64,000 nucleotides of DNA, taken from Macrostomum lignano. Its lineage: Eukaryota. Shown piece after piece: positions 35,315 through 37,509 of this stretch. The stretch covers positions 1 to 64,000 of the forward strand of contig NIVC01002063.1 in the NCBI GenBank assembly GCA_002269645.1. The letters are read 5' to 3'. The notes under the pieces are model-generated. The model was not told the origin of the DNA. It did not search any database and saw nothing but the letters and a program-made list of their open reading frames with translations. The position numbers and the translations under genes were made by a program. Every line of letters starts with the position of its first letter. The first letter of the stretch is position 1.

Positions 35315-37509
35315 TCAGTCGATTTGGCGGCCACCGTCACACTCGCTGGCGGTGGTGCAAATCTCTGAAATTCAGTGAGTGTCAGTCAGTCAGTCAGTCA
35401 GTCAGTCAGTCAGTCAGTCAGTCAGTCAGTCAGTCAGTCAGTCAGTCAGTCAGTCAGTCAGTCAGTCAGTCAGTCAGTCAGTCAGTCAGTCAGTCAGTCA
35501 GTCAGTCAGTCAGTCAGTCAGTCAGTCAGTCAGTCAGTCAGTCAGTCAGTCAGTCAGTCAGTCAGTCAGTCAGTCAGTCAGTCAGTCAGTCGCTACTCAC
35601 CGCCGACACAGCAGACCCCAGGTGCGGCGCATTTGCCCCCAGCGTCGCCAAGGCAACCGTTGGCGGGGAGTCGCCTGCGGCAGGCGGCGGCCCTCCAGCT
35701 GGCGACGCCGCTGCAGTCGAAGCTGCCACCGGCGTTTCTTGGCTCGCTGCTGGCGGTCACGATGCAGCCGAAGCTGCCGCAGCAGAGACGCTCACCGAGA
35801 CACACTCCGCTGAGGCCGGGGTCGCCACAGGGCACGCAGGGGTCTGAGAAAATAGATAGATAGATAGATAGATAGATAGATAGATAGATAGATAGATAGA
35901 TAGATAGATAGATAGATAGATAGATAGATAGATAGATAGATAGATAGATAGATAGATAGATAGATAGATAGATAGATAGATAGATAGATAGATAGATAGA
36001 TAGATAGATAGATAGATAGATAGATAGATAGATAGATAGATAGATAGATAGATAGATAGATAGATAGATAGATAGATAGATAGATAGATAGATAGATAGA
36101 TAGATAGATAGATAGATAGATAGATAGATAGATAGATAGATAGATAGATAGATAGATAGATAGATAGATAGATAGATAGATAGATAAATAGATAGATAGA
36201 TAGATAGATAGATAGATAGATAGATAGATAGATAGATAGATAGATAGATAGATAGATAGATAGATAGATAGATAGATAGATAGATAGATAGATAGATAGA
36301 TAGATAGATAGATAGATAGATAGATAGATAGATAGATAGATAGATAGATAGATAGATAGATAGATAGATAGATAGATAGATAGATAGATAGATACTCGTA
36401 GATAGATAGATAGATAGATAGATAGATAGATAGATAGATAGATAGATAGATAGATAGATAGATAGATAGATAGATAGATAAATAGATAGATAGATAGATA
36501 GATAGATAGATAGATAGATAGATAGATAGATAGATAGATAGATAGATAGATAGATAGATAGATAGATAGATAGATAGATACTCGTAGATAGATAGATAGA
36601 TAGATAGATAGATAAATAGATAGATAGATAGATAGATAGATAGATAGATAGATAGAGAGATAGATAGATAGATAGATAGATAGATAGATAAATGGATGCA
36701 GTTCACAGCGGTTCACTTCTATTTACGAATTCCTTGCAGCGGGCTCAGGACACGCAGCTGTCTCTTTCATTTCATCAAAGCCAGCAATCCGATCAGCTGC
36801 TCAGAGTCAGATAATTAAAGTACCTTTTTAAGGCATTCGAGCTCTGTAATTGCTGAATCATCAGTTTGTCATAAAAAAGGCAAGTTTAAAACTTTCCCTT
36901 TCAATTAAGTAAGGAAATTAATGCAGCGCTACATATGATAAATATAGTTTCCTTATATGGTCAGGTGGAGTCGCCTATGCCTTAATAATATACCTTATGC
37001 AAGCAGCTTGTTAGCTGTATCTGAAAACCTCCCGCCTACTTCCATTCATTGGCGCTTCTATCAATTAGCATGTAAAAACATCCATAACCAAAACTGCGCA
37101 CAATCTTCTGTCTCTCGAACCGTCCTGACCCTACCTGTGCGCTGATTCGCTGATTAGCTGCGTCTAACTTCATGCCATTTCGTCTCCCTGGCCCTATCTG
37201 TGCGCTGATTGGCTACTTCTAACTTCATGCCATTTTGTCTCCTTGACCCTGTCTGTGCGCTGATTGGCTGCTTCCAAATTTATGCCATTTCCTCTCCCTG
37301 ACCCTATCTGTGCGCTGATTGTCTACTGGTAATGTTTTTATGATATTGTCTAACAGAAGCCACAATATTAATAAATACTTATTATTGCTCTCACCGAATC
37401 CGCTTCGCTTTCCGCCTGGCGGGCAGTTGTTGATGAAGCAGAGCTCGGCGAGGCTGCACAGGCTTAGCAGCAGTAGAAACGGCAGTACCTGAGCACTCTG
37501 ACTCGTCAT
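35315..37509 (-). CDS. Vasopressin/oxytocin-family (vasotocin-neurophysin) precursor; exons 37509-37395, 35843-35601, 35364-35315; 135 aa
   Basis: Signal peptide MTSQSAQVLPFLLLLSLCSLAEL, then CFINNCPPG, GKR and SGF|D. Exon 2 reads PCVPCGDPGLSGVCLGERLCCGSFGC...GGKCAAPGVCCVG and exon 3 reads EICTTASECDGGRQID*. All 14 neurophysin Cys are present. Two phase-1 GT-AG introns, the canonical 3-exon layout. Confidence 0.93.
35382..35591. repeat. (CAGT)n microsatellite forming most of intron 2 of the neuropeptide gene
   Basis: Direct reading. Confidence 0.99.
35852..36692. repeat. (GATA)n microsatellite abutting the exon-2 acceptor in intron 1 of the neuropeptide gene
   Basis: Direct reading. Confidence 0.99.

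What the first reader, a model, noticed from the sequence alone, without database searches (positions are those of the whole stretch)
35315..37509. Hidden oxytocin/vasopressin-type neuropeptide gene with the unusual nonapeptide CFINNCPPG-amide
Seen: a spliced 135-aa precursor (signal peptide, CFINNCPPG at 37440-37414, GKR amidation/cleavage site, neurophysin), split over three exons buried in microsatellites. Known: family members include conopressin CFIRNCPKG, annetocin CFVRNCPTG and crustacean CFITNCPPG. I do not recognise the Asn4-Asn5 plus Pro8 combination, and it lacks any basic residue. Inference: if the host is a flatworm, this is a full-length canonical nonapeptide in a lineage where this system is sparsely characterised, implying a cognate GPCR and a water-balance or reproductive role.
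Basis: partly seen in the sequence, partly recalled or inferred. Interest (0 to 1): 0.8.

Follow-up and report, generated by a model that had tools for sequence, protein, structure and literature searches.

The report
Flatworm vasopressin/oxytocin-type neuropeptide gene, already known
The window carries a real, intact three-exon vasopressin/oxytocin-type hormone gene of the flatworm Macrostomum, but a 97%-identical copy encoding the same CFINNCPPG peptide is already in GenBank and was cited in 2022 as a Macrostomum vasopressin-type precursor.

Summary
On the minus strand, three exons (37509-37395, 35843-35601, 35364-35315) with GT..AG introns splice to a 135-aa precursor. It has a hydrophobic leader, CFINNCPPG, GKR, and a 14-cysteine neurophysin. 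Pfam Hormone_5 scores above its cut-off, and Foldseek against PDB returns only bovine neurophysins.

The host is Macrostomum lignano or a very close relative. PAA87831.1 (BOX15_Mlig001406g1, "hypothetical protein") is 97% identical, has the same length and the same peptide, and lies in a collinear locus with identical exon borders. That GenBank annotation was built from RNA-seq transcripts. Kobayashi et al. 2022 list this accession among the M. lignano VP/vasotocin precursors.

The gene is therefore neither hidden nor new. The peptide differs at position 4 only from crab CFITNCPPG and scallop CFIRNCPPG.

Some things remain open:
- M. lignano has a second, 47%-identical family encoding CFVANCPPG.
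- Residue -1 before Cys1 is Leu, a poor signal-peptidase site.
- The neurophysin lacks the conserved Arg8/Glu47 pair that clamps the hormone's amino terminus.
- The literature reports no clear receptor ortholog in M. lignano.

Interest is low to moderate.

The parts
37395..37509 (-). Exon 1 (115 nt): start codon 37509-37507, signal peptide, nonapeptide, GKR and the first 3 1/3 codons of neurophysin. It is followed by a phase-1 intron.
   Evidence: The exon border is identical in the M. lignano locus L001. Intron position and phase match the second M. lignano VP/OT gene in L002.
37441..37509 (-). Predicted signal peptide, residues 1-23 (MTSQSAQVLPFLLLLSLCSLAEL). The hydrophobic core is residues 8-21. 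The cleavage point is uncertain: L23|C24 would give the canonical peptide, while A21|E22 fits the -3/-1 rule better.
   Evidence: Kyte-Doolittle profile. Comparison of the -1 residue across 35 non-Macrostomum precursors. No signal-peptide predictor was available.
37414..37440 (-). Nonapeptide CFINNCPPG (Cys1-Cys6 ring, Asn5, Pro7, Gly9).
   Evidence: aligned with family members.
37405..37413 (-). GKR: glycine amide donor plus a dibasic prohormone-convertase site.
   Evidence: Gly and Lys/Arg are invariant or near-invariant in alignment A1.
35844..37394 (-). Intron 1 (1551 nt, GT..AG). It contains a 55-bp minisatellite (37148-37327) and a (TAGA)n microsatellite of about 210 units (35852-36690).
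   Evidence: The homologous intron in L001 is 1079 nt.
35601..35843 (-). Exon 2 (243 nt): central neurophysin, Cys1 to Cys12.
   Evidence: a single tblastn HSP at 100% over 81 aa.
35365..35600 (-). Intron 2 (236 nt, GT..AG, phase 1), almost entirely (CTGA)n.
   Evidence: The homologous intron is 919 nt in L001.
35315..35364 (-). Exon 3 (50 nt including the TGA stop at 35317-35315): neurophysin C-terminus with Cys13 and Cys14. There is no copeptin.
37585..37587 (-). Upstream in-frame ATG, 26 codons before the annotated start, with no intervening stop. It is also present in L001. The RNA-seq-based GenBank model of the L001 copy does not use it.

Best explanation
This is a functional copy of a Macrostomum (M. 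lignano or a sibling species/homeolog) vasopressin/oxytocin-neurophysin-type preprohormone gene, of the Mlig001406 family. Shown by sequence: a three-exon gene encodes a hydrophobic leader, the nonapeptide CFINNCPPG, a GKR processing/amidation site and a 14-Cys neurophysin domain. Inferred from the established biology of the family: the leader is removed in the ER and the Cys1-Cys6 disulfide forms. A prohormone convertase cuts after KR, carboxypeptidase trims the basic residues, and PAM converts Gly10 into the C-terminal amide. The product is cyclic CFINNCPPG-NH2 (calculated monoisotopic mass 960.39 Da), packaged with neurophysin in dense-core vesicles of a few neurons and released to act on a GPCR. 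By analogy with platytocin in polyclad flatworms, its likely role is water balance or reproduction in this intertidal worm. The exact N-terminus of the mature peptide, and whether this neurophysin still binds it, are not settled.
For: The exon model and translation are exact. Pfam Hormone_5 scores 33.5 bits, above the gathering cut-off of 27.2. Bovine neurophysin II matches at E=0.003 with cysteines aligned. An AF2 model (pLDDT 65) gives only bovine neurophysins in the PDB fold search, best E=2.5e-4 and TM-score (normalised to the target) 0.53. A full HMMER scan of 1.84 billion representatives gives 30 hits at E<=1e-3. Of the 28 other than the query itself and a 575-aa repeat protein, all carry C..x.C.xG plus a G[KR][KR] site. 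All 20 that I looked up are a second M. lignano gene or are VP/OT-type by name or carry the motif: inotocin, annetocin, sepiatocin, holotocin, conopressin, vasotocin, AVP. All 16 cysteines align. M. lignano PAA87831.1 is 97% identical over 135/135 aa with the same nonapeptide. Its locus L001 is collinear with the window over more than 20 kb at about 85-95% DNA identity. Exon borders are identical. The CDS is 97.5% identical, against 77-88% for the flanks and 85-94% for the non-microsatellite part of intron 1. There are 6 synonymous and 4 non-synonymous changes, none in the peptide, GKR or any Cys, giving dN/dS about 0.2. The GenBank models of that assembly derive only from RNA-seq-guided transcripts, so the spliced mRNA of the sister copy exists. 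Intron positions and phases are shared with the second M. lignano VP/OT gene. Kobayashi et al. 2022 list PAA87831.1 as a VP/vasotocin precursor and show antidiuretic and egg-laying roles for the polyclad homologue.
Against: There is no direct transcript, peptide or receptor evidence for this particular copy. The exact 135-aa sequence is not in the 15-billion-protein collection. Residue -1 to Cys1 is Leu, whereas 33 of the 34 non-Macrostomum precursors have A/G/S/T. Precise cleavage at Cys1 is therefore not assured. The neurophysin has no acidic residue in the Cys7-Cys8 loop, while 18/19 full-length relatives have Glu at the bovine Glu47 position. It has Asp where 27/34 have Arg (bovine Arg8). 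Kobayashi et al. found no clear VP/OT-receptor ortholog in M. lignano. dN/dS rests on only 10 substitutions.
Confidence: 0.88

Rival explanations
1. The gene is real, but the mature product is not the canonical nonapeptide. Signal peptidase cuts at SLA|EL, giving an N-terminally extended ELCFINNCPPG-NH2 (possibly pyroGlu-blocked). The neurophysin domain no longer clamps the hormone's free alpha-amino group.
For: Cleavage at A21|E22 gives Ala at -1 and Ser at -3, the classical signal-peptidase pattern. Cleavage at L23|C24 puts Leu at -1, which is seen in none of the 34 non-Macrostomum precursors examined (19 A, 7 G, 4 T, 3 S, 1 P). Both M. lignano gene families keep Glu-Leu before Cys1. The window neurophysin has no acidic residue in the Cys7-Cys8 loop. 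The Glu47 equivalent and the Arg8 equivalent are absent in both M. lignano families. [quoted passage not shown]
Against: No signal-peptide predictor could be run and no peptidomic data exist. The whole leader is fairly conserved between the two paralog families, so conservation of EL is not special. Every characterised family member starts at Cys1. The second gene family has Asp/Glu one or two positions further along a longer loop, which could substitute for Glu47.
Confidence: 0.18
2. This copy is a decaying or silent duplicate (a homeolog left by the recent genome duplication). Only the L001 copy (Mlig001406g1) is expressed.
For: The exact protein of this copy is absent from the public protein collection searched. 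The M. lignano assembly is highly redundant. Three of the four amino-acid differences cluster in the last 12 residues.
Against: The ORF is intact, and all splice sites, the start, the stop, the peptide, GKR and all 16 Cys are preserved. The CDS is 97.5% identical against 77-88% for the flanks, and dN/dS is about 0.2. The 130 nt upstream of the ATG are about 95% identical to L001.
Confidence: 0.07
3. It is a chance ORF or an assembly artefact among microsatellites.
For: The exons are short and embedded in long tetranucleotide repeats.
Against: The motif is absent from 200 shuffles. Pfam scores above its gathering cut-off. A syntenic 97%-identical annotated gene exists in an independent assembly.
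Confidence: 0.01

Closest known systems
Macrostomum lignano BOX15_Mlig001406g1 (PAA87831.1 / UniProt A0A267GP75)
   Same: It has the same length (135 aa), nonapeptide (CFINNCPPG), GKR site, 14-Cys neurophysin, exon borders and neighbouring genes. Protein identity is 97%.
   Different: There are four substitutions (S5N, T124A, E127D, G131D), and intron lengths differ (1551/236 against 1079/919 nt). It sits on a different scaffold or copy with about 85-95% non-coding identity. The window is therefore a homeolog/paralog, or comes from another assembly or a sibling species.
Second M. lignano VP/OT-type family, Mlig003431 (PAA50340.1, PAA63765.1, PAA85176.1; UniProt name 'Oxytocin')
   Same: It has the same architecture and the same two phase-1 intron positions, the same Glu-Leu before Cys1, Pro8, and a 14-Cys neurophysin.
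   Different: Identity is only 47%. The peptide is CFVANCPPG with a GKKR site, and the Cys7-Cys8 loop is longer and contains Asp/Glu. It is present at three loci of the Mlig_3_7 assembly.
Platytocin of polyclad flatworms (Stylochoplana pusilla, Notocomplana humilis; Kobayashi et al. 2022, PMC8896804)
   Same: It is a flatworm VP/OT-type precursor. That paper places the M. lignano accessions in the same family. Platytocin is amidated and cyclic, is made in two pairs of brain neurons, and promotes survival in hyperosmotic water and egg-laying.
   Different: Platytocin has a demonstrated receptor (PTR), whereas none was found in M. lignano. The platytocin sequence sits in a figure I could not read, so residue-level comparison was not possible.
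Arthropod and mollusc Pro8 peptides: CFITNCPPG-NH2 (Cancer, Portunus; precursors with the same nonapeptide from Daphnia, ticks and Tachypleus came up in the search) and CFIRNCPPG-NH2 (Mizuhopecten)
   Same: Eight of nine residues are identical. The crustacean form also has no basic residue.
   Different: Position 4 is Asn rather than Thr or Arg. The precursors are only about 35-41% identical.
Vertebrate vasopressin/oxytocin-neurophysin precursors (bovine neurophysin II, PDB 1NPO/2BN2)
   Same: They share the domain order, the 14-Cys framework and the three-exon plan. Intron 2 lies two residues after the second Cys-Cys pair. For the vertebrate exon limits I rely on my own knowledge of the AVP gene (neurophysin residues 10-76 in exon 2).
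   Different: The window protein has no copeptin and a shorter neurophysin N-terminus (5 residues before Cys1 rather than 9). It has a 7-residue insertion between Cys6 and Cys7, and the Arg8 and Glu47 equivalents are missing.

Membership tests
Vasopressin/oxytocin-neurophysin preprohormone family | N-terminal signal peptide | tested here: met
   Residues 8-21 form a hydrophobic core with a 9-residue Kyte-Doolittle mean above 2.3, and they align with the leaders of family members. No dedicated predictor was available.
Vasopressin/oxytocin-neurophysin preprohormone family | Signal peptidase cleavage immediately before Cys1, leaving a free alpha-amino group on Cys1 | tested here: inconclusive
   The -1 residue is Leu, against A/G/S/T in 33 of 34 non-Macrostomum precursors. 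A better -3/-1 site lies two residues upstream.
Vasopressin/oxytocin-neurophysin preprohormone family | Nonapeptide C-aromatic/aliphatic-aliphatic-x-N-C-P-x-G with a Cys1-Cys6 ring | tested here: met
   CFINNCPPG. C24, C29, P30 and G32 are invariant and N28 is near-invariant in alignment A1.
Vasopressin/oxytocin-neurophysin preprohormone family | Gly-Lys/Arg-Arg amidation and cleavage site directly after the peptide | tested here: met
   GKR at residues 33-35.
Vasopressin/oxytocin-neurophysin preprohormone family | Neurophysin domain with 14 conserved cysteines (Pfam PF00184) | tested here: met
   Hormone_5 scores 33.5 bits against a gathering cut-off of 27.2. There are 14 Cys with spacing 2,8,5,0,4,16,10,8,7,5,0,4,5 against the canonical 2,7,5,0,5,9,9,6,7,5,0,4,5. 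All nine Foldseek PDB hits are neurophysins, from a model of only moderate confidence (pLDDT 65).
Vasopressin/oxytocin-neurophysin preprohormone family | Hormone-binding residues of neurophysin (bovine Arg8 and Glu47, the latter salt-bridging the hormone's alpha-amino group) | tested here: not met
   The Cys7-Cys8 loop is CSGVASWRAAAC with no acidic residue, while 18/19 full-length relatives have Glu at Cys7+3. Asp replaces the Arg found in 27/34 relatives two residues before neurophysin Cys1. The role of Glu47 is taken from Yuasa et al. 1993 as cited in PMC3932059. This is a conserved functional feature rather than a family-defining one, so it does not exclude membership.
Vasopressin/oxytocin-neurophysin preprohormone family | Three-exon gene with introns just before neurophysin Cys1 and just before Cys13 | tested here: met
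   Exons are 115/243/50 nt and both introns are phase 1. Positions and phases match the 47%-identical M. lignano paralog. The correspondence with vertebrate genes comes from my own knowledge, not from a tool.
Vasopressin/oxytocin-neurophysin preprohormone family | Spliced mRNA is made | tested here: inconclusive
   No RNA data could be searched. The 97%-identical copy PAA87831.1 has the same exon borders and comes from an annotation built only from RNA-seq-guided transcripts.
Vasopressin/oxytocin-type signalling system | Cognate VP/OT-type rhodopsin-family GPCR in the same genome | not testable with these tools
   No eukaryotic genome collection could be searched. Kobayashi et al. 2022 report no clear receptor ortholog in M. 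lignano.
Vasopressin/oxytocin-type signalling system | Mature cyclic, C-terminally amidated peptide detectable in tissue | not testable with these tools
   This needs mass spectrometry. The expected masses are given.

The most novel reading that the evidence does not exclude
Macrostomum may have re-engineered the ligand-handling end of the VP/OT system. Both of its precursor families have a non-canonical residue (Leu) before Cys1, and neither has the Arg8/Glu47 clamp at its canonical positions. The window's family has no acidic residue in that loop at all. No orthodox receptor has been found. The active products could therefore be N-terminally extended (Glu-Leu- or pyroGlu-Leu-) VP/OT-type peptides that do not use neurophysin as a carrier and that signal through a divergent or different receptor.
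Probability: 0.12. Interest if true: 0.55.

Novelty: already known. Interest (0 to 1): 0.3.

Why it matters
Until 2020, reviews listed the VP/OT system as lost in the whole phylum Platyhelminthes (PMC7181382). In 2022 it was found in polyclads and noted in M. lignano (PMC8896804). M. lignano is the one flatworm of these with efficient transgenesis and an annotated genome (PMC5730564). It is therefore a practical place to study an ancestral antidiuretic and reproductive hormone in an animal without coelom or circulation. This window adds no new gene. The analysis does sharpen what is worth testing there: two divergent peptide genes (CFINNCPPG and CFVANCPPG), an atypical signal-cleavage site, a neurophysin without its classical hormone clamp, and a receptor that has not been found.

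Tried and rejected
- A full-text search for 'CFINNCPPG' found 0 papers. The peptide string itself is not in searchable text, and no supplementary files of the 2022 paper are held. I could not confirm whether the sequence is printed in its figures.
- The word-indexed protein search found only one cluster. The exhaustive HMMER scan was needed to reach the second M. lignano family and the other phyla.
I therefore could not show that this copy is PAA46766.1, the fourth accession cited in 2022, nor decide between M. lignano homeolog and sibling species.
- P0002 (A0A1I8H502, 'GLOBIN domain-containing', 704 aa) is a fused mis-model from an older assembly and carries the L001 variant, not the window's.
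- The ORFs on the plus strand across the locus (35375-35863 and others) are translations of microsatellite plus the antisense of exon 2. I rejected them as genes.
- Five of the other ORFs tried gave no Pfam hit (39363-39791, 46371-46715, 48385-49326, 54030-54587, 1356-2615).
- A receptor search was considered and dropped. No searchable collection holds the Macrostomum genome, and a protein search seeded with a vertebrate receptor would be swamped by other taxa.
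Full report
**1. What is in the sequence**

Reading the minus strand of 35200-37700 shows an ATG at 37509. It is followed by a hydrophobic stretch and by codons at 37440-37414 that translate to CFINNCPPG.

Joining 37509-37395, 35843-35601 and 35364-35315 gives a 408-nt frame of 135 codons plus TGA. The product is:

MTSQSAQVLPFLLLLSLCSLAEL-CFINNCPPG-GKR-SGFDPCVPCGDPGLSGVCLGERLCCGSFGCIVTASSEPRNAGGSFDCSGVASWRAAACRRRLPANGCLGDAGGKCAAPGVCCVGEICTTASECDGGRQID

Both introns start GTGAG and end in a pyrimidine-rich tract plus CAG, and both are phase 1. 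Intron 1 (1551 nt) holds a 55-bp minisatellite and about 210 TAGA units. Intron 2 (236 nt) is almost pure (CTGA)n.

**2. It is more than chance**

- A relaxed family motif (C-[FYLIW]-[IVFLW]-x-[NDS]-C-[PAS]-x-G) occurs once in the six-frame translation of the 64-kb window, followed there by GKR. It occurs 0 times in 200 shuffles.
- There is no second copy in the window (tblastn).
- Pfam Hormone_5 (neurophysin) scores 33.5 bits against a gathering cut-off of 27.2.
- Bovine neurophysin II is the best PDB sequence match, with cysteines in register.
- An AlphaFold2 model built on a 20-sequence alignment is only moderately confident (pLDDT 65). Even so, all nine Foldseek matches in the PDB are bovine neurophysins, with best E=2.5e-4 and a TM-score (normalised to the target) of 0.53.

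**3. Whose gene it is**

The word-indexed protein search returned one hit: PAA87831.1, 'hypothetical protein BOX15_Mlig001406g1 [Macrostomum lignano]'. It is 135 aa, 97% identical, and carries the same CFINNCPPGGKR.

Its locus (L001; NIVC01000215.1 of GCA_002269645.1) is collinear with the window over the whole 22 kb fetched, at roughly 85-95% DNA identity.

Within the gene the exon borders are identical, while intron lengths differ (1551/236 against 1079/919 nt). The CDS differs at 10 of 408 positions:
- 6 changes are synonymous.
- 4 are non-synonymous: S5N, T124A, E127D, G131D.
- None touches the peptide, GKR or any cysteine.
- dN/dS is about 0.2.

CDS identity is 97.5%. The comparison figures are 88% for the 5' flank, 85-94% for the unique part of intron 1, and 77% for the 3' flank. 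The window is therefore Macrostomum lignano or a very close relative, and the gene is under purifying selection.

The exact protein of this copy is not in the 15-billion-sequence collection. I could not decide whether the window is the other homeolog of the partly duplicated M. lignano genome, another assembly, or a sibling species. Wudarski et al. 2017 describe 180 Mb of duplicated blocks in that genome.

**4. Expression evidence (indirect)**

The GenBank annotation of Mlig_3_7 was produced solely from a genome-guided RNA-seq transcriptome (StringTie/TACO/TBONE). Transcripts sharing a name prefix were clustered at 95% identity (PMC5730564). The spliced mRNA with exactly these exon borders therefore exists for the sister copy. 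For the window's own copy it remains to be shown.

An in-frame ATG 26 codons upstream (37587) is open in both copies. The transcript-based model does not use it.

**5. Family placement**

An exhaustive HMMER scan of 1.84 billion representatives found 30 proteins at E<=1e-3. Two of them are the query itself (P0001) and a 575-aa repeat protein (P0015). The other 28 carry a nonapeptide of the C..x.C.xG type followed by a G[KR][KR] site.

All 20 that I looked up fall into one of three groups:
- a second M. lignano gene;
- named VP/OT-type precursors: locust 'oxytocin-neurophysin-like', sea-cucumber holotocin, tick inotocin, Daphnia vasopressin-like, horseshoe-crab conopressin/neurophysin-like, sepiatocin, annetocin, snail conopressin, fish vasotocin, bird mesotocin-type and armadillo AVP;
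- unnamed, but with the same motif.

In the 20-sequence alignment, both peptide cysteines, Pro7, Gly9, the amidation Gly and 11 of the 14 neurophysin cysteines are invariant. The other three cysteines are at least 90% conserved.

The best hit outside the Mlig001406 family is a second M. lignano family. Mlig003431 (PAA50340.1/PAA63765.1 and PAA85176.1) is 47% identical, with predicted peptide CFVANCPPG followed by GKKR. It is present at three loci of the assembly. In L002 its gene has three exons (127/237/68 nt). Its phase-1 introns lie at the same two positions as in the window gene: after GKKRSFP (window: after GKRSGF), and between GVCCDL and DSC (window: GVCCVG | EIC).

From my own knowledge of the mammalian AVP and OXT genes, where exon 2 encodes neurophysin residues 10-76, the second intron lies at the homologous spot, two residues after the second Cys-Cys pair.

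**6. What was already known**

Kobayashi et al. 2022 (Sci Adv, PMC8896804) described platytocin and its receptor in two polyclads. [quoted passage not shown] They also state that clear receptor orthologs were not found in other flatworms, including M. lignano.

Three of those accessions are the proteins found here. UniProt even names a member of the second family 'Oxytocin'. The gene is therefore neither hidden nor new.

The string CFINNCPPG does not occur in any searchable full text. Only four papers mention both Macrostomum and vasotocin. Nobody appears to have characterised the peptide, its expression or its function in Macrostomum.

**7. How unusual the peptide is**

The table in Odekunle & Elphick 2020 (PMC7181382) lists these peptides:

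| Peptide | Source |
|---|---|
| CFITNCPPG-NH2 | crabs |
| CFVTNCPPG-NH2 | tardigrades |
| CFIRNCPPG-NH2 | scallop |
| CFVRNCPPG-NH2 | Platynereis |

CFINNCPPG differs from the crab and scallop peptides at position 4 only. Position 4 is where the listed peptides vary most (Gln, Arg, Thr, Ser and others). Lacking a basic residue is normal for the crustacean and tardigrade forms, and for oxytocin. Asn4 is a small novelty at most.

**8. Departures that are real**

Three features all concern the amino terminus of the hormone.

(a) The residue before Cys1 is Leu (SLAEL|C; HLCEL|C in the second family). In the 34 non-Macrostomum precursors retrieved it is A (19), G (7), T (4), S (3) or P (1), and never Leu. 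The single 'L' counted is the M. lignano mis-model P0002. The classical -3/-1 pattern fits SLA|EL better.

(b) The neurophysin Cys7-Cys8 loop, CSGVASWRAAAC, contains no acidic residue. In contrast, 18 of 19 full-length relatives have Glu three residues after Cys7, the position of bovine Glu47.

(c) Two residues before neurophysin Cys1 there is Asp, where 27 of 34 relatives have Arg (bovine Arg8) and 5 have Lys or His.

[quoted passage not shown] Substitutions of Ala(-1) in the human leader cause familial diabetes insipidus. Both statements come from titles cited in PMC3932059.

Taken together, these features allow a minority reading. The mature peptide may be Glu-Leu-extended, or the neurophysin may no longer clamp it. 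They do not disprove the canonical reading. Neither could be tested here, because no signal-peptide predictor and no peptidomics were available.

**9. Mechanism proposed**

Shown: the gene structure, the domain order, conservation, and family membership by sequence and fold.

Inferred from family biology:
- ER import and leader removal
- Cys1-Cys6 disulfide formation
- convertase cleavage after KR
- carboxypeptidase trimming
- amidation from Gly10, giving cyclic CFINNCPPG-NH2
- storage with neurophysin in dense-core vesicles and release from a few brain neurons
- action through a GPCR on protonephridia, gonads and neurons, by analogy with platytocin

The receptor step is the weakest. The only paper that looked found no clear ortholog in M. 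lignano.

**10. Verdict**

Its claims of concealment and unusualness do not hold, because the gene family is in GenBank and was cited in the 2022 literature. I rate it 'already known', with low-to-moderate interest. The residual value lies in three points: the two-gene repertoire, the atypical cleavage site together with the missing Arg8/Glu47 pair, and the unresolved receptor.

Noticed in passing
L002 6001-8065, L003 6001-7711, L004 3001-4764 (M. lignano scaffolds NIVC01001815.1, NIVC01003664.1, NIVC01000342.1): M. lignano has a second, 47%-identical VP/OT-type gene family (Mlig003431). Its predicted peptide is CFVANCPPG with a GKKR site, it is present at three loci, and it has the same two phase-1 intron positions as the window gene. 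The 2022 paper lists the accessions together and, in the text I could read, does not distinguish two peptide types.
   Followed up: partly
window 37441-37449 (residues 21-23, AEL) and 35680-35715 (Cys7-Cys8 loop, residues 82-93): Leu stands at -1 to Cys1, with a better signal-peptidase site two residues upstream. The conserved neurophysin Arg8 and Glu47 equivalents are both absent. All three features concern the hormone's free alpha-amino group.
   Followed up: partly
window 37585-37587 (minus strand): An in-frame upstream ATG, 26 codons before the annotated start, has no intervening stop and is conserved in L001. It is not used by the RNA-seq-based model, and the real 5' end or trans-splice site is unknown.
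   Followed up: partly
window 37148-37327: A 55-bp minisatellite (3.3 copies, 86% matches) in intron 1. Each unit contains CCAATCAGCGCACAG. The L001 intron aligns across this region.
   Followed up: no
window 24546-24941 (minus strand): This is a globin exon (Pfam Globin, E=7e-11). UniProt A0A1I8H502 (P0002, 704 aa, 'GLOBIN domain-containing') is an older gene model that fuses this globin, translated microsatellite and the first two-thirds of the VP/OT precursor. It is a mis-annotation.
   Followed up: partly
window 11339-12379 (+) and 21182-21793 (+): Neighbouring coding exons: an MBOAT-family acyltransferase (E=2e-16) and a RAWUL domain (Polycomb-group RING-finger type, E=9e-14). By synteny with L001, an F-box gene should lie at about 25-32.7 kb and a 357-aa gene of unknown family at about 39.3-42.1 kb.
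   Followed up: partly
whole window, e.g. 56772-59865, 32938-33784, 52887-53532, 35852-36690: Micro- and minisatellite load is very high. There is a 3.1-kb (AGAAAGAG)n block, three tetranucleotide arrays of about 650-850 bp, and more than 25 minisatellites of 14-165 bp units. This matches the published 15% simple/tandem-repeat content of M. lignano.
   Followed up: partly
P0018 / P0052 / P0053 (Rotaria magnacalcarata, e.g. CAF1133186.1): A bdelloid rotifer has an unnamed protein with a complete VP/OT-type precursor (CYITNCPIG-GKR plus a 14-Cys neurophysin) on several contigs. The 2020 review listed the system as lost in rotifers.
   Followed up: no
P0033 (UniProt A0A1I8HIC0, 'Oxytocin', 150 aa): This older model of the second family reads CFVANCPPG-KQLSAC, lacking GKKRSFP. 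This looks like a mis-placed splice junction rather than a real isoform.
   Followed up: no
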